DNA from: Tetramitus jugosus
Taxonomy: Eukaryota; Protista; Heterolobosea
Assembly: GCA_937625935.1 (NCBI GenBank)
Contig: OW569388.1
Location: 186,001 to 250,000 of the forward strand
DNA length: 64,000 bases
Direction: 5' to 3'
Under the pieces are notes generated by a model. That model searched no databases. It had not been told where the DNA came from and saw only the letters and a list, made by a program, of their open reading frames with translations. This document shows, in pieces, positions 33,973 through 54,401 of the stretch. How positions within the stretch are numbered: position 1 is the first letter of the stretch; every line of letters starts with the position of its first letter. The translations under genes and the position numbers were made by a program.

Positions 33973-36900
33973 TTATAGGATGTTACTGCTAGCAGTCACA
34001 AGAATTTCAATTTGCTGCTCTTTCAAAAGAACACCTGTGGAATCATTAACAGGCAGGACGATAAACTTGAGGGCACCCTCATTCAATCCTTTCACAGAAT
34101 TGATTCGGTAGTATGGGGAAAATGATCGCCCGATAAGTGAATCATCCTGGAAGATGTAATACGATAGAGTTGTTTTGGTACTTGCGTCATTGATGCTCCA
34201 GTGTAGGTTGATATGACAAATTAATTCATCGCCTGGCTCATTCATGGATTGAGGTAGCCATGTTAAGCTGAATCCTCCATCTCCAATTTTAAGTTGCTCT
34301 CTGTCTGGTACAAGATGAGCATAACCAACAGTTAATTGACCTAGCAAGAGCTTATATTCACAATTGATGTCAGACGATGAGTAGCAGCAGATACCAATAC
34401 TCCTTATCACTGATGAGACCATATCTCGAGGAATCATGACCGTTTCTCTTCTCCATCCATTCACATTGGATATTGTCGATTCTATTCTGTGAGTGATCCC
34501 ATCGGCTGATATCTCGGGCGCGCACGAGGGCAATAGATAGTGTGCTGTATTTTCCTCATCCAATAACACTAGAACAGCTCGGGAAGATGGCTGAAGTGCT
34601 TTTGTTATTGCCGTGATGAAGTATCCATTTCTCAAGTCCAAACAAGTTTTGAACAAAGAGTAAATGGAATCACTTCTTGGGTTGAAATTCTGTTTGGCGA
34701 ACATCAGTGAGGATCCTCCACAAAATGCTTCCTCATAGTAGAAAGTAACTGAGATAGATTGGTGTAGGGTTGCTTTGTCAGATGTCATGTACGACGGTAG
34801 AATACTCTGATCACTCAAGTTGTTCCATGGATTGCAAGACCTTTCTATTCCTTCTATAAAGTACTTACTGCCAACACCAGTGTTGAAATTAGAGGTAAAA
34901 GGTTCTCCATATGTTGCTACAATAGGTCTCTCCTCATAGAAATCCGCGAATCCCTCCTCTTTTGTTTGAATAGAAACAAATGGATCCGACAAGCGACTTC
35001 CAAAGTGGCCTGCCCAGTACTCAACATCCCTGCCTCCATCTCTAAAAATAATAAATCTCAACTTATCAAGTTCTTGACCTGTTACTTCAAACTGTCCTGA
35101 TAATAGATTCCATTGATTTGAACATTCGACCTTTCCTGATGAAAAACTACGAAGTATTGATTCGTCTTCTGATCTCAGCTCTAACTCCATGAACACTTCA
35201 TCAGCAAAATTGGGACCAGTTCCCTTATGCCAAACACCGAATCGAATGGCAACTGTTCCACACCTAGGAATGATATCCGCATAATCTAAAAGATCTATTC
35301 TCTGTTCCTTGGTACATGGTTGATATGAAGTAACGAAGCACTTGTCCCTAAACCCATTGCTCTCCACAGCCCATCCATCTCCTCCATTAATGATAACCTT
35401 CCAATGCTCTAAATTCGACTCTCCACTGGAGTTCTTCAGCAGTTGATATTGCCGAATTCCATTCCAAAATCGTGCCTCGTTATCCTCAAACATTAATCTT
35501 CGGGCTTTACTATCACCAGAAGCACCACATGCTTCAAATGTCCACCCTGGTGCAAATAAAGCGACAGATAATTCACACTTTTCAATCTCTTCCAATGCGA
35601 CATGTGTTGTATATCCTCCACCTCCATATGTATTTCTACCAAATATATCAATACCTACAAACACGTCCTCTTTTCTCTCTCCAGCAAGTTGAGCAGTTTT
35701 TAACAGCAACTCTGGGTTCCAACAATAGTTGAGAAAGATGGCATCACAGACATCGAAGAATTGTTTGTTCTTGAGAGTTAATGCATTCTGCCATTTCAAT
35801 TCTCCATCGATAGTGATTGAATCGTACCATATCACAAGTGAGCCAGGTATTCTTCGATGCATCTCTTGTGTCATGTAGTCCAAGAAACAGATTAACTTTT
35901 GAACACTAACCAAGTCAGGGAGGGTATTCTCAATGTTGAAGAACCACCCATCAAAACCATAGTACTCTGCCATATCGATCAATTTATCTGCGTACCTTTG
36001 CCCGTTCTTATCTTTTGACAGTAAGTAAAGAGTCTCCTTCCGTCCTTCATCCCATTCGGTAATGAAGGTAGCAAAGCACTTAACACCATTTTTGTGAGCG
36101 GTGTTGATCCACCCGACAGGTGGAATGGCTATCCTTTCGTGACTAAAGTAGATAAAATAGTCAATGTACTGCCAATGCTTGAAATTATAAACACATGGTT
36201 GATTATATCCCTGTGTCATGGCATCCTCTAGATAACCACCTTTCATATCGTGACAGTGGATTACCTTCCGCTTGTAATCTTTTAGTCTTTGTTGAAAGCG
36301 AACAGATGCCCTATTCATTGGATCAATACCGGGCTCCCATGCCTCGAGCTGTCTAACGCTAGACCAAGGTCTTGATCTAATATGCAACTCCTTCTGAAAT
36401 GCGGTATCACTTGGGTAGTGTGGTTTCTCATTCATCAACGACTCTACAAGTTGTTTTTCGCTTGTGAACTTTGTTTGTACGCTCCACTTGACACTCTCCA
36501 TACATCCAACAAAGCTGTTGCCAAACTTTTCATCTGTTCCAACGTATATTGGCCATTTGTTTGCTGAACAAGAAAAAGAGCATTGCTCCTTCCGTGCACA
36601 TACCTCTCCATCAATGAGAAGAGTGATCACTGAACTTGACTCCCTGGTTGTCGTATCCTGTGTATTATGGAAAGTAACTGCGACATGAGTCCATTTAAAC
36701 AAAGGTATTTGTACATTGGACACGAGTTCTAGTCTGCCATGACTCCACTGTGCATCAAACATCAAACGATTCGAATACTTGTCCAGATACAACTTGAAAT
36801 AGTCATCTTGGTTGCCCTTGAACAGAATCACTCTCTGTTTCTCCTTGTTTTGAACAGAACACCAATCACAGGTCACATAGATCCAACCAGAAACACAAGT

Positions 36901-37104
36901 GGTCATCACATCAGATGCTTCTCTATCCTCCATCTTCAGTACACTTTGAGAAAACAGACTCTTGTGAGACAGTCTGATACGATTGCCCACATACTGATCA
37001 ATAACAGGGTCATCGTTGTCAGTATGATCGCCTAAGAATTGACAAACAGACAACAGGGAAACACTTTGACTTGATTGATCAAGTTCTTCTTGTTGGAACA
37101 ACAT
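33973..37104 (-). CDS. ENGASE: GH85 endo-beta-N-acetylglucosaminidase with N-terminal LamG-like domain and inserted FBA (Fbs1-type) domain
   Basis: HCHDMKGGY, YFSH, AHKNGV, FITEW, GFDGWFFNIE (catalytic N-x-E), WYDSIT, GIDIFGR, ALFAPGW; WTHVAVT (LamG); GGDGW, FVTSY, WAGHFG (FBA). Confidence 0.92.
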   Translation of the reverse strand: MLFQQEELDQSSQSVSLLSVCQFLGDHTDNDDPVIDQYVGNRIRLSHKSLFSQSVLKMEDREASDVMTTCVSGWIYVTCDWCSVQNKEKQRVILFKGNQDDYFKLYLDKYSNRLMFDAQWSHGRLELVSNVQIPLFKWTHVAVTFHNTQDTTTRESSSVITLLIDGEVCARKEQCSFSCSANKWPIYVGTDEKFGNSFVGCMESVKWSVQTKFTSEKQLVESLMNEKPHYPSDTAFQKELHIRSRPWSSVRQLEAWEPGIDPMNRASVRFQQRLKDYKRKVIHCHDMKGGYLEDAMTQGYNQPCVYNFKHWQYIDYFIYFSHERIAIPPVGWINTAHKNGVKCFATFITEWDEGRKETLYLLSKDKNGQRYADKLIDMAEYYGFDGWFFNIENTLPDLVSVQKLICFLDYMTQEMHRRIPGSLVIWYDSITIDGELKWQNALTLKNKQFFDVCDAIFLNYCWNPELLLKTAQLAGERKEDVFVGIDIFGRNTYGGGGYTTHVALEEIEKCELSVALFAPGWTFEACGASGDSKARRLMFEDNEARFWNGIRQYQLLKNSSGESNLEHWKVIINGGDGWAVESNGFRDKCFVTSYQPCTKEQRIDLLDYADIIPRCGTVAIRFGVWHKGTGPNFADEVFMELELRSEDESILRSFSSGKVECSNQWNLLSGQFEVTGQELDKLRFIIFRDGGRDVEYWAGHFGSRLSDPFVSIQTKEEGFADFYEERPIVATYGEPFTSNFNTGVGSKYFIEGIERSCNPWNNLSDQSILPSYMTSDKATLHQSISVTFYYEEAFCGGSSLMFAKQNFNPRSDSIYSLFKTCLDLRNGYFITAITKALQPSSRAVLVLLDEENTAHYLLPSCAPEISADGITHRIESTISNVNGWRRETVMIPRDMVSSVIRSIGICCYSSSDINCEYKLLLGQLTVGYAHLVPDREQLKIGDGGFSLTWLPQSMNEPGDELICHINLHWSINDASTKTTLSYYIFQDDSLIGRSFSPYYRINSVKGLNEGALKFIVLPVNDSTGVLLKEQQIEILVTASSNIL

Positions 37105-44191: not shown

Positions 44192-47100
44192 ATGACAACA
44201 ACAAAAACTTTGGATCATCATCATGACAATGATAATGATAACAACAACAACAACAACAACCATAATAACAACACATGGCATCGATTTGAGCCAAACTTGA
44301 TCGAAAGACCCACATTTGCCGATCATTTCCATCATTTTGTTCTTCAGGAGCCTCAGAAATCACTTCTTCATTTCTTGAATGACTCTGGTCACTTGTTGCA
44401 CAGCTTGACAGCTTCCATGTTGGATGCTGCTGCCATTCGTGTCGCTCAATTCTTGTTATCATCGGAGAAAAAAAATTTGGCGGGAGATCGCATCATTTTA
44501 CTGTGTGATCCTGGTGTGGATTTTGTGGTTTCGTTTTTTGGTGTCTTGTATGCAGGGATGATTGCTGTGCCTAGTTATCCACCCATGAATGAAAAACAGT
44601 TTAGAAAGTTGTTCATGATTGGTAAGAATTGTAGAGCTAAGACGGTTCTCATGTCAGGAGAGTTCTATCGGATGATGCACAGTGCTCTGCCAGAGCTAGA
44701 GAGAGAATTGGGCATGGATGAGCCGATTCAGTGGTTGAGCATGGATCACGTTTCTGATTTGTCTCGTATTTTGAGCTGTGCTTCGACGAAAAAGACGGTG
44801 GCAGTCGATGAGGCAGCCACATTGCAAAAACGCAGTGATGATTTACAATGGATCGAGTCCATTGTGAGAAATGAGTTTGTTCGACCAGAGATACAGAGTG
44901 GAGATGTGGCGTTTTTGCAGTACACGAGTGGTTCTACGTCGGATCCAAAGGGAGTCATGGTCACTCATCAGAACATTTTGTTGCATACGTCAATGATTTG
45001 TCGTGTGTTTGAATACTCTGGAAAGGATACTAGTGTTACTGTAAGTGTGTCTTTTTGTGTGCGTGACCTCTAGTTTATTTACTTGTTTTGTGGGCATCCA
45101 TTTTTGACTGTAATATTTTGATGTGTATTTGTGTTTGTGTGTCCATTGTCCATTCTAGTGGCTTCCTCCCTATCATGACATGGGATTGATTGGATCTCTG
45201 TTGACTGCAGCTGCTTGCTTAACCACAACCTATGTACTTTCTCCGTTGGCATTTGTCAATAATCCAATTGTGTGGTTACAGACGGTTACGAAATACAAGG
45301 CAACAATTACGGGTGGACCTAATTTTGGTTACGAGTATTGTGCATTGCGTGTTTCTGAAGCTCAATTGGCTCAGTTGGATTTATCTACATTGAGACTGTG
45401 TTATACTGGTGCAGAACGTGTGTAGTATTTTGTCGCATTTAGATTGTTAAGTTTGTCTATGATGAAAGAGTTTGATAGTCTAATATTTGTTCATTTTATC
45501 TGTGTTTGATGACGTAGCGATTCGACTGTCGACCATGCAACACTTTTCACAAAAGTTTGCTTCGGTTGGATTTCGATTCGACACTTTCTATCCATGCTAT
45601 GGTCTCGCAGAAGCAACACTCATGGTGTCTGGAAAATTGACAAGCAAGGAGTTGATTAAACATATTCGAGTGGAGCAGAGAGCGCTTCAAGCCAATAAGA
45701 TTAAGCTATTGAGCGAGTCCAGTGGAGATAACCAACAAATATTGGTATCTTCTGGAAATTCGAGTCATATTCAACCTGTGAAAATTGTGAACGCAGAGAC
45801 GAGAACGTATTGTAAAAATACTTATGAAATTGGCGAAATTTGGGTGCAGCGAAACGGACAGACACCTATTGGATATTGGGCAAACGAACAGCTCACAGAA
45901 GAGTCGTTTTATGCACGAACGAGCGATGAGAACGATCAGACAGAATATATGAGAACAGGCGATTTAGGATTCGTTGATGAGCAAGGAGCTCTATTTGTAT
46001 GTGGTAGAATCAAGGATTTGATTATTATTCGAGGTAGAAACATTTATCCGCAGGATGTTGAGGCAGTTGTCGAGAATTCTTCTCCTCTCGTGAGAAATGG
46101 ATGCTCTGCTGCGTTTAGCGTTGAGCACAGTGCATGTGAGCGCTTGGTTGTAGTTTGTGAGGTGAAGGACGTGAGTAAGCAAGACACCGAAAAGATACAA
46201 ACACTGTCGGAGTCAATGGTGAAGTCAATATCGGATGAGTTGCAAGTTCGAGTGAGCACCATTATATTTATTAAGCCAAAGACAATTCCTAAGACGACCA
46301 GCGGTAAAATTAGACGATTTGAGTGCAAGCAGTTGTTTAATGATCAAAAGTTGGAGGTAATTGCTACGATGGAGTTCGAAAACGAAGTCGAGAAAATTCA
46401 GATAACATCCAATGATGCAGTTGAATCGCATGAACCTGCTTCCTTTTTGCATTCTGAAAGTCACTTGCTCGTCGTTCAGCAATTGGTGTCTCGGTTAGCA
46501 CAAACGCTGAACATTAGTGAAGATTTGATCGATATTAATCGCCCATTCTCCGAAATGGGATTAGATTCACTGAAAACCTCCCTGTTGATTGGTGAGCTGG
46601 GCAAGGTTCTCGATAGAGAGTTATCTCCGATAATATTTTATCAATTCCCAACAATTAATTCGTTAGCCGATCATCTATGTGCAAATCAGCAAAACACAGA
46701 TTCAAGTAACATTAATCATCAAAAGTATGGCCCAATGGAGGATATTGCCATTGTTGGTATGTCATGCAGATTGCCAGGAGCAGACAACCTGGAGCAATTC
46801 TGGACTAATTTACTGTCTGGAACCAATGCTCCTTCATCCTTGCATCCAAAGTATAGAAGAAGTTCATTCCCTGTCTCCTACATTGATAATGCCTTCCAAT
46901 TTGATCCAGAATTCTTCTCTATATCTCGACGAGAGACCAAGTCTATGGATCCTCAACAACGGATACTGTTAGAGGTTTGTTGGGAAGCATTGGAGGATGC
47001 AGGAGTTTCCGCAGAGGTATTGAACAATTCAGACACTGGGGTTTTCGTTGGTGCTTCTTCATCCGACTTTGCTCTCGAAAGTTACAAGTATTCAGGACTC

Positions 47101-50100
47101 AATTCTGCTCATTCAGCAACTGGAGCTGCTTTATCTATTTTGGCTAATCGATTGTCATATAGTTTCAATTTAAGAGGTCCTTCCATGGTTTTGGACTCTG
47201 CTTGCAGCTCCTCTTTGCTAGCCGTCCACCAAGCTTGTCAAAGCATTCGAGCTGGAGATTGTTCTATGGCTCTTGCTGCTGGTGTCAATCTCGTTCTGGC
47301 TGACACTATCTCTCAGTCACTGGTTACTGCAAACTTCTTGTCTTCAGATGGACAATGCAAAGCATTTGACGCTGAAGCGGATGGTTATGTTAGAGGGGAA
47401 GGCTGTGGTGTTGTCGTTCTGAAGCCACTATCGAGAGCATTGAGTGACAATGACCAAGTATACGCGCTTATCAAGGGTTCTGCAGTTGTTCAGGACGGAA
47501 GAAGTAACGGACTCACTGCTCCAAATGAGAAAGCCCAGGAGTTGGTTATATCAGAGGCATGCAAGAGAGCTAACGTCGATCCAGCCCAAATTACCTTTGT
47601 GGAGTGTCATGGAACAGGAACCTACTTGGGCGATCCAATTGAAGCACAAGCATTGGGCAGTATCGTAGGAAAATCTACTCGAGAGGTTCCATGTATTATT
47701 GGATCTGTGAAATCGAATATTGGGCATTTGGAAGCTGCTTCTGGTATTGCATCTTTGATTAAGACAGCTCTCGCAGTTCAATCTAGGCGTTTACCAGCAA
47801 CCGTCAACCTCAAAACTCCAAATCCGTTGATTCCTTTTGATAAATACTGCCTTGAGTTGGCTAGAATAGAGCATGAGTTGCCGGAGCAAGTGATTGCTGG
47901 AGTCAGTAATTTTGGTTTCGGTGGCACAAATGTTCACGCTATTTTGGCTTCTGCACCAAAGAATATTGGTACAAAGAATGCTGTGGTGGATAACTCATTG
48001 ATCAAGCAATATGTTTTTCCATTTTCTGCAAAGAATGAACATTCATTGAAGCATTTGGTTGGCAAGTATATCAACTTTTTGCAGAATGCAGTTGATGCTG
48101 GAGACTCATTCCTAAGCAACTTGAGTTATTCTCTTTGCATTAGAAGAACTCATCTTCCTCAGAGGATTTGTATTTGCGCTTCAAACACATCTGACTTGAC
48201 TCAGGAGCTAAAGAAGTACCGCAATGGAAAGGATTCAGTTCATATGAAGAAGGGCTTTGTTGCCTCCAACTCGGTTTCATCTGTCGTTTTCGTTTTCCCA
48301 GGACAGGGAGTTGATCAAGTGAGTCATGCTAAATTCTTATTATCAAATCCGGTATTCCATTCAAGCATCAAGACGATTGAAAGGGCATTCCAAGAGCTGG
48401 TTCCAAATATCAGCTTTGAGCACATTATTAATAACTATGAAGCACTGAAAGAGGATCTCTTGTCTGTGCAGAGTAGTGTGTTTGCAGTTCAAGTTGCATT
48501 AAGTAGCTTGTGGACATATCTTGGTGTTACGCCATCGGCTCTCATTGGTCATTCACTCGGTGAAATTACAGCAGCATATCTTGGTGGGGCATTAACACTT
48601 CAGAACGCAGTCCGTATTATTTACTCTCGCAGTATTGTAATGCAGAAGAAACTGAAAGGCAGAGGCAAAATGATCATTGCCCGATTATCTAAGGAGGCGG
48701 CTACTGAAATTGTTCAGAATATTGAAGGAGTGTCAATTGCAGCTGTGAACTCTACACGATCCATTACATTTGCTGTTGATATTGAACAAGTGGCAGTAAT
48801 GAATGCTCTCCTTTCGGATAATTCCGTTTCTCACAAATACTTGGACATGGACTATGCATTCCATTGTCCACGAGTTGATGAGGTCACACCTGAATTCTTG
48901 CAACTTGTGAGGGATGTGAATGCTCAGTCTTTGCAAATTCCAATATATTCTACCACAAAGGGAGTCAAGCTCTCAAGAGAAGATGGTAAGACACTTACAG
49001 GAGAGTATTGGGTAAAGAACATGGTCAATCCTGTTCTATTTGAAACAGCCACTCAACTAGTGCTTCAGGAGAAGCGAAACATCGGCATGAGACATTTGTT
49101 TATCGAGGTGGCTGGAAGAGAGGTGTTGAGTCCTGTGGTTCAACAAATTATTCACTCTTGTGCTGATAGCACACATAAGTCAGTTGCTACTGTACACAAG
49201 AGCACAACTGAACTACATGCAACTCTATTCGCTTCTCTCTATGCAAGTGGAGTTAACTTTAACTGGGAGCGAGCACTCGGAGCAACTCTAGGCAGTGAAT
49301 ACGTCAGACTTCCAAATTATAGCTGGCTTCACTCTACTCCGTTTGTTCCTGCCTTCATCAATAAGAATAAGATCGAGCTTGAGAGTGAGCCTTTGAATGT
49401 TAATGATATTGTTGAGGGAATTAAAACTGAAGAAGTGGATGACTTTGAGAGTATGAAGGAGTTTGGATTATTGCTTGATAATATCTGCATAGCATATATC
49501 CTGTGTGCGTTGGTCAATATGGGATGGTCGGACATATTTAAGCAAGGCAATGTTGTAACGTTGGATCAGGTGATGAAGGAGTTGGCCATTCACTCAAGTC
49601 ACGCCTCCCTATTCACTCACATTATGCACACTCTGGAAAAGAATAACTTTTTGAATCCAAGTAATGTGAATACATGGCAAATTATGAAGACTTTAACGTC
49701 TCAGAAACATCTGACAGAATCAATCGAGCACATGCTACAACAAGGACGAGTGAACTTCCCAACATTCTTGGCTGAATTTAACATGATTGAGCGAAGTGGA
49801 AAGGAGCTACACAATGTTTTGCAGGGTAAGGTGAATGGTTTACAGATTCTATTCCCTAATGGATCCATGGACAACACTGAGGCTCTTTATGAGCGATCTG
49901 CTTTGTCTGAGGCCTACAACAATCAAGTGTGTCTATTCTTTGAGAGAGCAATGGCCACCATATCCACAACAGCTGGCAATTCAAGATACAAGCAAAAGAT
50001 TCTAGAAATTGGAGCTGGAACTGGTGGATTGACTTCTCATGTGCTAGAGACATTGTCAGCCGAGAATTTGAGTCCAAACAACAAGGATTTACGTACGGCT

Positions 50101-52263
50101 ACTATCCATGAATATGTATTCACTGATGTGTCAAAGCTGTTCCTATCGTATGCTCGACAAAAGTTTTCTGCTTGCTCTTACATGAAATACCAGTTATTGG
50201 ATGTCGAAAAGAGTCCTTCAGTGCAAGGTTTCAAGAAGCATTATTATGACTTTGTTCTTGCTGCCAATGTTCTGCATGCAACAATGAACCTACATGAAAC
50301 ACTGAAGAACATTAAGGAGTTATTGAAACCAGGTGGTGTTCTTGTCATCCTGGAGGTCACGAAGCCAACACTCTTCTTGGATCTGACATTCGGTTTATTG
50401 GACGGATGGTGGCGATTCTCTCAACACGGTAAGCAGGATATGAGAGATTCGTATCCGCTTCTCAGCTGGAGCGAGTGGAGTCTGTTGCTCACTGAAGCAG
50501 GATTTGCAAATGTGAATAGAATCAGCAGTCAGATCAGCTCGGCACATGCCATCGAAGAAGAATTCCAATCTGTAATGATCGCTCAACTACTTGAAATTCA
50601 AGACGAAGATAATGATGATCAAGAGGATGAATTGTCTGCCAGTGAGGTTAACCAAGCGCATGTTGTTGGTGATCAATTCAAGATTGATGATTCCGCATTT
50701 GAAAACATTAAGCGTTTAATTGAAGAGATCAAGCATGATAGATCAAGTGCTATTGCACTCAATACTCAGCTTCTTCAGTTTGTTCGTAATGTAGTCTCTC
50801 AAACTCTAATGATACCAGAGTCTGATCTAGACATAGATCAGAGTCTTGATAGCTTGGGTCTGGACTCTTTGATGGGTCTAGAGATCAGAAACTTGTTACA
50901 AAACAAGCTCGATGTTAAGATTCCAATTTCTGCCTTGATTGGAGAGGAGGGAGATGGATCTGGAATCACTATTGCCAGTTTGACACAGACAATGACCAGA
51001 GCCATTATGGTGTCCGAGGAACCGATCGAATCAGAACAACCAGATGACAACGTTGTGGAGCAATCGCAAGAAGAGGTCTCCAACGGCTTCTCTGATGCTG
51101 TGGAAGAGATAGTACACAACACGGCGAGTATGGATTCGAATGGCACAAAGGCCTGCATTCTTGCGATGGGAGTTGCCACTCCAAAATACAAGTACACGCA
51201 GAAGGAGATGGCTGAAATGGCTGTTGACTACTATGGTATCGAAAGTGATGAGGATAAGAAGCAACGATTGTACAAAATATTTGATGGATCTGAGATTGAT
51301 ACTCGCTACTCTGTCTGTGATTTTAGTACCATTAACAGACGAGAGGTATTTACATCATTCCAAGCAAGAAACCAAATTTATGAGACTGAAGCTGTCGAGC
51401 TGGCTGTTCAATCAGCAACAAAGGCATTAGAAGATTGGGGTGGCGACAGAAGCAACATTACTCACATTGTAAGTGTGAGCACAACAGGTAACAAAATTCC
51501 AGGTATCGAGTTTGAATTGGTGCATCGTCTCGGTCTATCCAAACATGTGGAACGCATTGCCGTAAACTTCATGGGTTGCTTCGGAGCTTTGCCTGGTTTG
51601 AAGACTGCCGTTTCATTTGCACAAATGAACTGCAAGAATCGTGTCTTGTTCGTGTCAACTGAGATTTGCAGCACGCACATTGAACCAGAGCCTACAACTG
51701 AGAACTTTGTCAGTTGTGCTATTTTCGCTGACGGATCTGCTGCAGCAATCATTGGCTGTGGTGATCCAGAGTTTGACAGTTTTGAAAGACCGCACTTTGA
51801 AGTTTTGAAGACAACCAGTTTTGCTATTCAGAACAGTTTGGACAAGATGTATTGGAAGGTGACTGATGCTGGATGGAGACTTGGTCTCTCAAAGGACATT
51901 CCTGATTTGATCTTCAATAACATTGAAACATTTTCAAAGGAGATGCTCGGCGCAAGACATGGAAGTGTTGCCAATATTCCAAAGCTGGATGCCGACTGGG
52001 CAGTACATCCAGGAGGAAAAGCAATTTTGATTGCTGTCGAAAAAGCCCTGGGGCTAACAAAAGAGCAAACAAAGCACAGTTGGAGCATTATGAAAGACAG
52101 AGGAAACATGTCCAGCAGCACAATTCTGCACGTCTTGCAAAAGATGATCAAGGAAGAACGTGAGAACTCTCATATGAAACAGAAGGCATTGACATGCTGT
52201 ATGGTGTTCGGACCGGGACTTACGATGGAAGGTTGTATTCTTAGAAGATTGAATAATAATTAA
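44192..52263 (+). CDS. Hybrid FAAL-ACP-KS-AT-cMT-ACP-type III PKS megasynthase (~2617 aa); exons 44192-45040, 45159-45417, 45518-52263
   Basis: Splicing restores the FAAL motifs T|WLPPYHDMGLIG and GAE(P)IR. Also FLQYTSGSTSDPKG, YGLAEATL, RTGDLG, PKTTSGK; ACP GLDSL x2; KS DSACSS/HGTGT/NIGHLE; AT GHSLG/YAFH; MT LEIGAGTGG/NVLHAT; type III GCF/HPGG/GNMSS/FGPG. Confidence 0.95.
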
Positions 52264-52322: not shown

Positions 52323-54401
52323 TCAATCAACATCCAAATCCAACGGTTCACCATCTGCCAACAAATCATGAAGCAATTGTTCATCGAATGAATCCCACAG
52401 TACAACATTGGAGTCACCTGCTTCCGTCCTAACAGTTTTACGCTGATCGTTCGGAGAGGCATCAGAATCGAGGTTGTCCTTGAATAGAATCTCGGGCGTT
52501 TGTTGTCCATCTCTAATCAACTGTACTTGCTCAATTGCTCTCTCTTCTTGTGGTACTACTGCAGAGTAAATGATTGAACTCATGTGTTTCTCCTTCTCCT
52601 GAATGGCATTCTCTTTTTGTTGTCTGGCAAGTGCAAGTTCAATCTTCTCCTCATCAGTCAGACCAACACTCGTCGGTCGCTTGCTTCCATCAATCGTATG
52701 GGCTTGAATACAACTCAAAAGATCACGTATGACATCACTGTGCTCCTTCTCAATCATGGAGAACTTTGTGGCAGCAGTGGCCAAGTGATAGTAGCCCAAT
52801 CGAATATTCATCAAGAGTCTTGTTACCACTTCTGGTGTTGCGTCCTGTATGTCTCGATCAACACTGAGTCCGTTGTTGAATTGACTCACGTACATCAAAT
52901 GGATACGAGAAGCAAACGCAACGTATTGAATGGGAGCGGGACAATACGTGAACAACATGATGTGCTTTGAGACGTCTTCTGTGATGATATCAGCAAACTT
53001 GCTCAATTTTTCGATCGAGATATCAGGTGTGGCAAACATGAGCTGTAAACGAATGCCGTTACTGATCAATCGATAGTAGAAATGGAAGAGAACTTCACTC
53101 ATGTGTGTCTGTTGATTGTTTGGCCTCCAGTAGCCATGAAGAAGACACTCCGCATAGTCAACATAACTACTCACAGCAATAATATCACCCAGATCATCTG
53201 GAAGAGACATGAATGCCTTTAAGCTCTCAATTGGGTGTTCTTCTTGGTTGGGATGCACTCGAGGTTCAATACCACGAATGAGGACTTGAAGTGCACGAAC
53301 ACCATCTCTATAATCTGAAAACTTTCCCTTGAGACATAGGGCGACCAGAGCCAAACATTTGTGCACTACTGCGAGCTTCATTTTCTGACTCGCGTCCAAA
53401 TCTTCCTTTTTCACCAAGTGAAGATAATATTCAATTGCTTCTTTGTAAACTATTATTCTCCGCTCTTCTCCTCCTTCTCCAATCAAGTAGTAAGAAGCAA
53501 GGGCCAAGGCACAAATGAGGTAAACTTTGTCTTCGTTTGAGAATTTCAAGCTTCGAACCGTTTGTTTGTTCAAATAATCTCTAAACAATCGTTTGCACTG
53601 TTCAAATGTTCTTCTTGCAACAACAGAATGACCCAACCTCTGCAACGTAAAAGCTTGAATGCACAAGTATAGAAGAATCTTGGTTCCTGAACAAGTCTTC
53701 TTCTTGGATCGTTTGCTTCTCTTGGGAGAACCGTTACTGACGTCTTGGTCGTTTGAAGCATCGTTAAAAAAGTTTTTGGACGAGTAGTGCTTGTGGTTGA
53801 AGTGACCCAACTTTTCAACGTCTTCTCGACTCCACAATCGTTGTTCCCTCAATTGCTGTTTCTGTCGAATCAGATTGGTTTGTTGTTGTTGCAAAAGGTC
53901 GGAACTTGTAATGTGAAGGTTCTCTTGTAAAGTGTTGTCAATTGACAATTCTGTTGAGTATTCTTGAATTGCCGCAATAGTGTCATTCAATTGAGAAACG
54001 AGTTGAATGAGTTGACGGATAGTTTCCCTATCTAACATTGGAAATCCGTGAGAGAAAATATCAATGTAACTGTCCAACATTTGACTCATGTTTGTTACAT
54101 AATTTAGCTTGTTGTATATTTGTTGGACTCGATTGTTGAAGCGAACAGCAGGTAGAGACATTGATGAGAAGGACAATGAAGTGTCTACTTCGTCCGCAGA
54201 AGTCATGGTGGCTGACTCCTGGTGTCGCGCAATTTTGATTTTATTGTTGGGAGAGCCATCATCCATTGTTGGATGATCTGACAAGGCTCTCGCTCGCTTC
54301 AAAGATCGTGAGGGACTACTTGTTCCACGAGAAAATTGCATGGTATTGATCTTTCGTTTTGTTTGATATAATGGATTCTCTTCGTGGTAATAACTTTCCA
54401 T
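52323..54401 (-). CDS. Hypothetical helical protein, possibly transcription-factor-like
   Basis: Basic NLS-like patches, Gln-rich segment, helical core, acidic C-terminus; no DNA-binding motif recognised. Confidence 0.6.
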   Translation of the reverse strand: MESYYHEENPLYQTKRKINTMQFSRGTSSPSRSLKRARALSDHPTMDDGSPNNKIKIARHQESATMTSADEVDTSLSFSSMSLPAVRFNNRVQQIYNKLNYVTNMSQMLDSYIDIFSHGFPMLDRETIRQLIQLVSQLNDTIAAIQEYSTELSIDNTLQENLHITSSDLLQQQQTNLIRQKQQLREQRLWSREDVEKLGHFNHKHYSSKNFFNDASNDQDVSNGSPKRSKRSKKKTCSGTKILLYLCIQAFTLQRLGHSVVARRTFEQCKRLFRDYLNKQTVRSLKFSNEDKVYLICALALASYYLIGEGGEERRIIVYKEAIEYYLHLVKKEDLDASQKMKLAVVHKCLALVALCLKGKFSDYRDGVRALQVLIRGIEPRVHPNQEEHPIESLKAFMSLPDDLGDIIAVSSYVDYAECLLHGYWRPNNQQTHMSEVLFHFYYRLISNGIRLQLMFATPDISIEKLSKFADIITEDVSKHIMLFTYCPAPIQYVAFASRIHLMYVSQFNNGLSVDRDIQDATPEVVTRLLMNIRLGYYHLATAATKFSMIEKEHSDVIRDLLSCIQAHTIDGSKRPTSVGLTDEEKIELALARQQKENAIQEKEKHMSSIIYSAVVPQEERAIEQVQLIRDGQQTPEILFKDNLDSDASPNDQRKTVRTEAGDSNVVLWDSFDEQLLHDLLADGEPLDLDVD

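What the first reader, a model, noticed from the sequence alone, without database searches (positions are those of the whole stretch)
44192..52263. One-polypeptide FAAL-ACP-KS-AT-cMT-ACP-type III PKS: a candidate new 'steely'-like assembly line in a protist
Seen: three ORF-track fragments join through two GT-AG introns (45041-45158, 45418-45517). The splices rebuild FAAL motifs exactly (WLPPYHDMGLIG, GAEPI), giving ~2617 aa. Domain order: FAAL, ACP (~46470-46680), KS (~46740-47960), AT (~48280-49300), C-methyltransferase (~49420-50590), ACP (~50760-51000), chalcone-synthase-like type III PKS (~51150-52250). All catalytic residues appear intact; no KR, DH, ER or TE was seen. Established: Dictyostelium StlA/StlB fuse an iterative reducing type I FAS/PKS to a type III PKS and make MPBD and the DIF-1 precursor, but have no FAAL loader. 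Cyanobacterial alkylresorcinol pathways such as cylindrocyclophane Cyl use FAAL, ACP, type I PKS and type III PKS as separate proteins. Inference: that multi-gene logic is compressed here into one intron-bearing eukaryotic gene, probably an independent type I/III fusion. I do not know of this architecture having been characterised.
Basis: partly seen in the sequence, partly recalled or inferred. Interest (0 to 1): 0.96.

Follow-up and report, generated by a model that had tools for sequence, protein, structure and literature searches.

The report
Amoeba one-protein phenolic-lipid assembly line
A soil amoeba related to Acrasis and Naegleria expresses one giant spliced enzyme that appears to load a fatty acid, extend and methylate it once, and close it into a phenolic lipid, a fusion design so far described only in slime moulds and here built from different parts and kept across its whole amoeba group.

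Summary
Confirmed. The gene (44192-52263, three exons, 2617 codons) reads FAAL-ACP-KS-AT-C-methyltransferase-ACP-type III PKS, with every catalytic motif present and no KR, DH, ER or TE. Three independent soil metatranscriptomes skip both introns at exactly the stated bases; a DNA-like control run does not. The host is a heterolobosean near Acrasis. The same architecture occurs in Percolomonas, in Acrasis kona (mis-annotated as fragments) and in several environmental relatives. No bacterial or viral equivalent and no paper on it was found; papers still call type I/III 'steely' fusions slime-mould-specific. Likely product (inferred, about 0.55): a 4-methyl-5-alkylresorcinol or its acid, i.e. 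an MPBD-type ring on a preformed fatty acid. AT-less relatives sit in a conserved cluster with an O-methyltransferase and a flavin monooxygenase, which fits phenolic-lipid chemistry. 'Independent fusion' is unproven: the C-methyltransferase looks bacterial, the type III domain groups with other protist fused type IIIs including steely, and tree tests reject neither origin. Naegleria lovaniensis also carries a StlA-related steely-type locus. The scan's other notes on this gene concern the same DNA. New variant of a known kind.

The parts
44192..45040 (+). Exon 1: low-complexity N-terminus and FAAL N-terminal part (A3 motif FLQYTSGST at 44912)
   Evidence: RNA joint
45041..45158 (+). Intron 1, 118 nt, GT-AG, phase 0
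45159..45417 (+). Exon 2: FAAL middle part (starts WLPPYHDMGLIG, ends GAE)
45418..45517 (+). Intron 2, 100 nt, GT-AG, phase 1
45518..46365 (+). Exon 3 start: FAAL C-terminal part, collinear with solved FAALs across the insertion region; A10 lysine in PKTTSGK at 46288
46477..46677 (+). ACP1 (loading ACP; GLDSL, Ser codon at 46567)
46735..48087 (+). Ketosynthase with C-terminal extension (Cys 47203, His 47608, His 47725)
48286..49221 (+). cis acyltransferase (GHSLG, Ser 48553; YAFH at 48853), most likely malonyl-selecting
   Evidence: specificity reading from own knowledge
49399..50586 (+). C-methyltransferase (EIGAGTG, NVLH, LEVT, FGLLDGWW); best solved relative CurJ C-methyltransferase
50743..51012 (+). 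ACP2 (GLDSL, Ser codon at 50866), flanked by acidic flexible linkers
51151..52263 (+). Type III PKS domain (Cys 51577, His 52006, Asn 52105) to stop codon; best solved relative Steely1 C-terminal domain 2H84

Best explanation
A non-reducing, single-extension type I/type III hybrid megasynthase that turns a preformed fatty acid into a C-methylated phenolic lipid. Shown: expression, splicing, domain content, intact motifs, conservation. Inferred steps: (1) the FAAL adenylates a fatty acid and loads ACP1; (2) the AT loads malonyl on ACP2, the KS condenses once, and the cMT methylates the alpha carbon, giving 2-methyl-3-oxoacyl-ACP2 (no KR, so the ketone stays); (3) ACP2 hands this to the type III Cys, which adds two malonyl-CoA units and closes the tetraketide by C2-C7 aldol condensation. 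The product is a 4-methyl-5-alkylresorcinol or the undecarboxylated 5-methyl-6-alkylresorcylic acid: the MPBD ring with a chain set by the FAAL instead of by an iterative FAS. The module does in a eukaryote what methylmalonyl-CoA-first priming does for Streptomyces SrsA. The most likely role is a membrane, cyst or signalling phenolic lipid, possibly tailored further by unlinked enzymes.
For: Motifs intact and conserved in Percolomonas, Acrasis kona and environmental members. FAAL best hits are solved FAALs; cMT best hit is CurJ C-MT, 3.9e-60. The type III's best solved relative is Steely1, 2.2e-71, versus 2e-50 for the next, with His after the TEIC/TEVC motif and Trp in the MxW motif shared. 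StlA makes MPBD (PMC4164351). SrsA makes methyl-alkylresorcinol from fatty acid, one methylmalonyl and two malonyl (PMC6560455). In two different organisms (53% and 64% GC) the AT-less relatives are flanked by the same O-methyltransferase (49% identical) and FAD monooxygenase (51%), the gene set of hierridin-type and planctomycete alkylresorcinol clusters (PMC8086630, PMC10896814). Geometry (own reasoning): methyl on the first-extension carbon blocks aromatic Claisen closure, favouring aldol or lactone. Strain differences in exon 3: 30 synonymous versus 9 non-synonymous among the 39 listed.
Against: No biochemistry. Type III product type is poorly predictable from sequence, and such enzymes often release pyrones (own knowledge). 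No O-methyltransferase or monooxygenase gene of that cluster type lies in the window. The AT motif is YAFH here and PYH in Percolomonas, so extender choice is not certain. Fatty-acid chain length is unknown. The number of type I cycles is assumed to be one.
Confidence: 0.55

Rival explanations
1. Same loading and methylation, but the type III adds one or two malonyl units and lactonises, giving 4-hydroxy-5-methyl-6-alkyl-2-pyrones or tetraketide pyrones.
For: A bulky Trp at the position that limits the elongation pocket. Pyrones are common products of long-chain type III PKSs (own knowledge). The methylated carbon is compatible with lactonisation.
Against: The O-methyltransferase plus flavin monooxygenase cluster in relatives fits resorcinol-to-(hydro)quinone tailoring. 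The closest characterised relative, StlA, gives a resorcinol in vivo.
Confidence: 0.22
2. The KS-AT-cMT-ACP module is iterative, as in fungal non-reducing PKSs. It makes a longer, multiply methylated polyketide, and the type III mainly cyclises and releases it (for example a dimethyl resorcinol or a larger aromatic).
For: Single module without a TE. Eukaryotic single-module PKSs, including steelys, are usually iterative (PMC4164351).
Against: A dedicated FAAL-ACP loader and similarity to bacterial modular KS-AT-cMT modules point to one cycle. There is no product-template or reductive domain to control a long poly-beta-ketone.
Confidence: 0.13
3. The end product is a methylated alkyl(hydro)quinone or anisole made by unlinked tailoring enzymes and used as a redox or antioxidant membrane lipid; the megasynthase only supplies the resorcinol precursor. 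(Overlaps the best explanation in its first steps; differs in final product and role.)
For: Conserved O-MT + synthase + FAD monooxygenase cluster in two AT-less relatives. Srs-, hierridin- and planctomycete-type clusters work this way.
Against: No such genes next to the window gene or in the Acrasis kona, L001 or L003 loci. The AT-less forms are a separate lineage in KS, cMT and FAAL trees.
Confidence: 0.1

Closest known systems
Dictyostelid Steely hybrids StlA/StlB (type I FAS/PKS fused to type III PKS; MPBD, DIF-1 precursor)
   Same: One polypeptide ending ACP-type III; StlA-type members also carry a cMT; the type III domain is the best solved match (2H84) and lies in the same broad protist group in the best tree.
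   Different: No DH, ER or KR; an N-terminal FAAL-ACP loader supplies a preformed acyl chain instead of iterative synthesis; KS and type III lie outside the StlA clade; cMT scores twice as high to bacterial-type modules (194-237 bits) as to StlA-type (103-113); host is Heterolobosea, not Amoebozoa.
Cylindrocyclophane (Cyl) and Microcystis MKS type I/III clusters
   Same: FAAL loads fatty acid on ACP, type I extends, type III extends and cyclises (PMC11837247; PMC8086630); MksC already fuses AMP-binding and ACP.
   Different: Separate proteins, with reductive or branching modules and halogenase/alkylating enzymes; no single-chain form reported; no close bacterial fused type III found.
Myxococcus xanthus FAAL-dependent type III system and Streptomyces SrsA(BC); hierridin HidABC
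   Same: FAAL feeding a type III PKS (Hayashi 2011, cited in PMC10896814); ring methyl from the first extension (SrsA); O-MT plus oxidoreductase tailoring, as in the AT-less relatives.
   Different: Stand-alone type III enzymes; SrsA gets the methyl from methylmalonyl-CoA, not from a KS-AT-cMT module.
FAAL-ACP-KS-AT-initiated single-module synthases of cyanobacteria (olefin synthase Ols; McyG-like starters)
   Same: N-terminal FAAL-ACP loader plus one extension module in one chain; the top solved FAAL matches 7R7E-G are, from memory, the Ols FAAL.
   Different: Those end in KR-ACP-ST-TE or pass the chain to further modules; none ends in a type III PKS.

Membership tests
Steely (StlA/StlB) hybrids | Type I PKS fused through ACP to a C-terminal type III PKS in one polypeptide | tested here: met
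   junction in one open frame, not bridged by RNA here
Steely (StlA/StlB) hybrids | Iterative reducing type I part (KS-AT-DH-(MT)-ER-KR) that builds the acyl starter | tested here: not met
   No DH, ER or KR; FAAL-ACP loader instead
Steely (StlA/StlB) hybrids | KS and type III nest inside the StlA clade | tested here: not met
   Family is its own clade (96-100 SH-aLRT) outside the StlA + Naegleria + P0011 clade (97-98) in both trees
Steely (StlA/StlB) hybrids | Common origin of the fusion with steely (sister relationship) | tested here: inconclusive
   AU: family+steely KS clade p=0.447; family+bacteria type III clade p=0.236; cMT family+StlA on one side at support 82, long branch
FAAL (fatty acyl-AMP ligase) | Closest to solved FAALs, collinear over the FAAL-specific insertion region, with a cognate ACP | tested here: met
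   adjacent ACP1
FAAL (fatty acyl-AMP ligase) | Rejects CoA and acylates holo-ACP | not testable with these tools
   needs an assay
PKS C-methyltransferase (CurJ type) | Lid plus SAM core, His/Glu dyad motifs, FGL..GWW motif | tested here: met
   (TM 0.85-0.88 to 5THY)
Type III PKS (chalcone synthase superfamily) | Cys-His-Asn triad and CHS fold | tested here: met
   (TM 0.92 to 2H84)
Alkylresorcinol synthases | C2-C7 aldol cyclisation of a tetraketide | not testable with these tools
   inferred from relatives and gene neighbours only
Cyl-type multi-gene type I/III clusters | Separate FAAL, ACP, type I and type III genes with halogenase and alkylating enzyme | tested here: not met
   One gene; neighbours are RPN1 and unrelated genes

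The most novel reading that the evidence does not exclude
Heteroloboseans independently assembled a type I/III megasynthase that makes an MPBD-type alkylresorcinol used as an encystment or aggregation signal. Acrasis and Dictyostelium, which evolved aggregative multicellularity separately, would then converge on the same signal chemistry through different enzyme architectures, drawing on a shared, previously unseen protist toolkit of ACP-type III fusions (FAAL-ACP-III, FAAL-ACP-KS-(AT)-cMT-ACP-III, steely).
Probability: 0.15. Interest if true: 0.92.

Novelty: new variant of a known kind. Interest (0 to 1): 0.78.

Why it matters
Papers from 2014 and 2022 state that type I/type III 'steely' fusions are known only from cellular slime moulds (PMC4164351, PMC9489281). 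This gene, its orthologues in Acrasis kona and Percolomonas, the FAAL-ACP-type III proteins of Physarum and Soliformovum, and a StlA-related locus in Naegleria lovaniensis show that ACP-fused type III synthases are a wider protist family. This gives Heterolobosea a first concrete, testable secondary-metabolite pathway. Acrasis kona, the aggregative member, is cultured and has developmental transcriptomes (PMC11589745), so a link to multicellular development or encystment can be tested directly. A natural FAAL-loaded, single-chain type I/III synthase is also a useful chassis for making alkylresorcinols with chosen chain lengths; a steely hybrid has already been engineered for olivetolic acid (PMC9585784, PMC9489281).

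Tried and rejected
Misassembly, or a separate FAAL gene: rejected by spliced RNA contigs in three studies and by intron-free full-length homologues. Pseudogene: rejected (open frame, intact motifs, mostly synonymous strain differences). Bacterial contaminant: rejected (spliceosomal introns; RPN1 and tubulin-family neighbours; RPN1 tree beside Acrasis). O- or N-methyltransferase reading: rejected (CurJ-type cMT). Hidden KR, DH or TE: none by Pfam, local BLAST or model. Viral contigs: none. The word-indexed homologue search is not exhaustive (one search missed the Naegleria protein P0149 that one search found), so absence from Naegleria or Willaertia of the FAAL-type gene is not shown. The KS-region search was dominated by multi-module bacterial PKSs and did not identify a donor. 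Careful (bootstrap) trees did not finish; quick IQ-TREE trees were used, leaving out long-branch rows P0119 and P0017 (StlB-like) and redundant rows in the final type III trees. The FAAL tree was unresolved at depth and thinly sampled. ESM Atlas gave only sub-0.9 methyltransferase clusters. Papers: no description of this architecture in 10 searches. The Acrasis genome paper does not mention polyketides, and its held supplements (one cut) do not list AKO1_007086. Austin 2006 and Ghosh 2008 were not held.
Full report
Observation. The three pieces are there as described. Exon 1 is 44192-45040 (283 whole codons, ending ...DTSVT). Intron 1 is 45041-45158 (GTAAGT...TAG, 118 nt). Exon 2 is 45159-45417 and starts WLPPYHDMGLIG. 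Intron 2 is 45418-45517 (GTGTGT...TAG, 100 nt). Exon 3 runs 2247 further codons to the stop at 52263, for 2617 aa in all. Contigs from three soil metatranscriptomes of three separate studies skip exactly these two introns (45040>45159 and 45417>45518, GT..AG). In two of them a single spliced contig runs from exon 1 to the last base laid (50959). The DNA-like run X14 has no such joints and covers the introns. These strains differ from the window by about 1%. Of 39 listed exon-3 differences, 30 are synonymous, as expected for a gene under purifying selection.

Anatomy. Pfam and NCBIfam give AMP-binding (FAAL-type models best) on exons 1-2 and the start of exon 3, then ACP, KS, AT, methyltransferase, ACP and chalcone-synthase N and C domains. 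The FAAL part matches solved FAALs best and is collinear with them through the insertion region. The methyltransferase matches the CurJ C-methyltransferase (3.9e-60; TM 0.85-0.88). The type III domain matches Steely1 (2.2e-71; TM 0.92). The motifs are all present: FAAL A3/A5/A7/A8/A10, two GLDSL serines, KS Cys-His-His, AT GHSLG with YAFH, cMT EIGAGTG/NVLH/LEVT/FGLLDGWW, type III Cys-His-Asn. They are conserved in the relatives. An AlphaFold model of the last 1007 residues shows cMT, ACP and type III units separated by low-confidence acidic linkers, with no KR or TE remnant.

Host and surroundings. The neighbours are ordinary eukaryotic genes: RPN1 upstream; an orphan, an endonuclease/phosphatase and a tubulin-family gene downstream. 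RPN1's best named matches are Acrasis kona 66%, Willaertia 61% and Naegleria 57-60%. In a tree it falls in an environmental clade sister to the Acrasis clade (support 93). The host is therefore an unnamed heterolobosean amoeba or amoeboflagellate. There is no biosynthetic gene cluster in the window.

It is a family. The full architecture recurs in environmental proteins at 42-70% identity over the C-terminal part (P0020, P0002, P0003, P0006) and in Percolomonas (UniRef A0A7S1KP05, 2570 aa). In Acrasis kona, NCBI annotates only fragments (KAL0480320.1), but the locus holds an intron-split FAAL followed by one 1927-codon open frame with ACP-KS-AT-cMT-ACP-type III and intact motifs. Related protist designs also turned up. 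FAAL-ACP-type III occurs in Physarum and Soliformovum and in eukaryotic metagenome contigs. An AT-less FAAL-ACP-KS-cMT-ACP-type III occurs in two unidentified intron-bearing organisms, each flanked by orthologous O-methyltransferase (49%) and FAD-monooxygenase (51%) genes. Naegleria lovaniensis has adjacent KS-AT and DH-ER-KR-ACP-type III models whose KS and type III both group with StlA-type proteins (97-98). The 160 best bacterial and metagenomic type III loci were stand-alone enzymes of 30-38% identity, none fused to a FAAL or a cis type I module. Viral contigs had none.

Origin. The family is one clade in type III, KS, cMT and FAAL trees (99-100, 96, 84 and 99 SH-aLRT). Its branching (Acrasis with P0003, Percolomonas with P0006) is the same across domains, so the chain has been inherited as a unit within Heterolobosea. 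It does not nest in the StlA clade. The best type III tree puts it with the other protist fused type IIIs, apart from named bacteria. Its cMT scores far higher to bacterial-type KS-AT-cMT modules than to StlA's. This suggests a bacterial-type loader and module set in front of a type III domain already used in protist fusions. But AU tests reject neither a family+steely KS clade (p=0.447) nor a family+bacteria type III clade (p=0.236). The trees are quick searches, long-branch rows P0119 and P0017 were left out of the final type III trees, my StlA/StlB labels rest on architecture and similarity, and bacterial sampling is thin.

Mechanism (inferred). FAAL loads a fatty acid on ACP1. One KS/AT cycle with malonyl plus C-methylation gives 2-methyl-3-oxoacyl-ACP2, unreduced because there is no KR. 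The type III domain takes it, adds two malonyl-CoA units and cyclises. A methyl on that carbon prevents aromatic Claisen (phloroglucinol) closure but suits C2-C7 aldol closure, which puts the methyl next to the alkyl chain: 4-methyl-5-alkylresorcinol or its carboxylic acid (own reasoning). That is the ring of MPBD made by StlA (PMC4164351), and it is the same carbon skeleton as SrsA's product from fatty acid, methylmalonyl and two malonyls (PMC6560455). The O-MT plus monooxygenase pairing in the AT-less relatives matches hierridin- and planctomycete-type alkylresorcinol clusters and supports phenolic-lipid chemistry for the wider group. I put this at 0.55, pyrones at 0.22, an iterative module at 0.13 and a quinone end product as the main role at 0.10. 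The biological role (membrane or cyst lipid, antibacterial, or signal) is untested.

Comparison and novelty. It works like a steely (ACP handing an acyl chain to a fused type III) and like the Cyl/FAAL-type III pathways (PMC11837247, PMC8086630). It is not a member of either: no reducing iterative FAS, and not a multi-gene cluster. Ten literature searches found no description of the architecture. PMC4164351 and PMC9489281 say steely-type hybrids are known only from slime moulds; the 2021 FAAL survey lists none in Discoba, the 2026 one notes FAALs in Naegleria without this context; the Acrasis genome paper does not mention polyketides. Verdict: a real, expressed, conserved and apparently undescribed variant of type I/III hybrid megasynthases. 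Interest 0.78.

Noticed in passing
L005:6623-14776 (Naegleria lovaniensis, GCA_003324165.2, XP_044550103.1 and upstream model): Adjacent KS-AT and DH-ER-KR-ACP-type III gene models, with frame changes between them; KS and type III both group with dictyostelid StlA-type proteins (97-98 support). A steely-type hybrid outside slime moulds; the similar P0011 (L169) is one 2467-aa ORF in a metagenome.
   Followed up: partly
L002:4925-13886 and L166:6386-16366: AT-less FAAL-ACP-KS-cMT-ACP-type III gene flanked by a divergent UbiG-like O-methyltransferase and a convergent FAD monooxygenase in two unidentified intron-bearing organisms (53% and 64% GC): a conserved eukaryotic three-gene phenolic-lipid cluster.
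   Followed up: partly
P0103 (Physarum polycephalum), P0410/P0129 (Soliformovum irregulare), L168:10001-14353: FAAL-ACP-type III single-chain proteins in Amoebozoa and in eukaryotic metagenome contigs: the minimal form of the same logic.
   Followed up: partly
L004:4706-12049 (Acrasis kona JAOPGA020000651.1): Public annotation splits the orthologue into two small fragments; its introns, like the window's and those of L002 and L166, lie only in the FAAL part but at different positions.
   Followed up: yes
L006:1235-2317 (Candidatus Dependentiae MAG): Stand-alone type III PKS, with methyltransferase genes on both sides, that groups with the protist sequences rather than other bacteria; Dependentiae infect protists (own knowledge), so gene exchange or bin contamination is possible.
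   Followed up: no
P0025 (4818 aa) and P0119 (689 aa): Proteins made of 12 and 2 tandem type III PKS-like domains; P0025 repeats an alternating pair and may be an assembly artefact.
   Followed up: no
window 45726: All three RNA strains carry an in-frame 3-nt insertion here relative to the window.
   Followed up: no
window 33973-37104 (-): GH85 endo-beta-N-acetylglucosaminidase with a LamG domain and an F-box-associated sugar-binding domain.
   Followed up: no
window 52323-54401 (-): 692-aa ORF converging on the synthase's 3' end 60 bases away, with no Pfam match.
   Followed up: no
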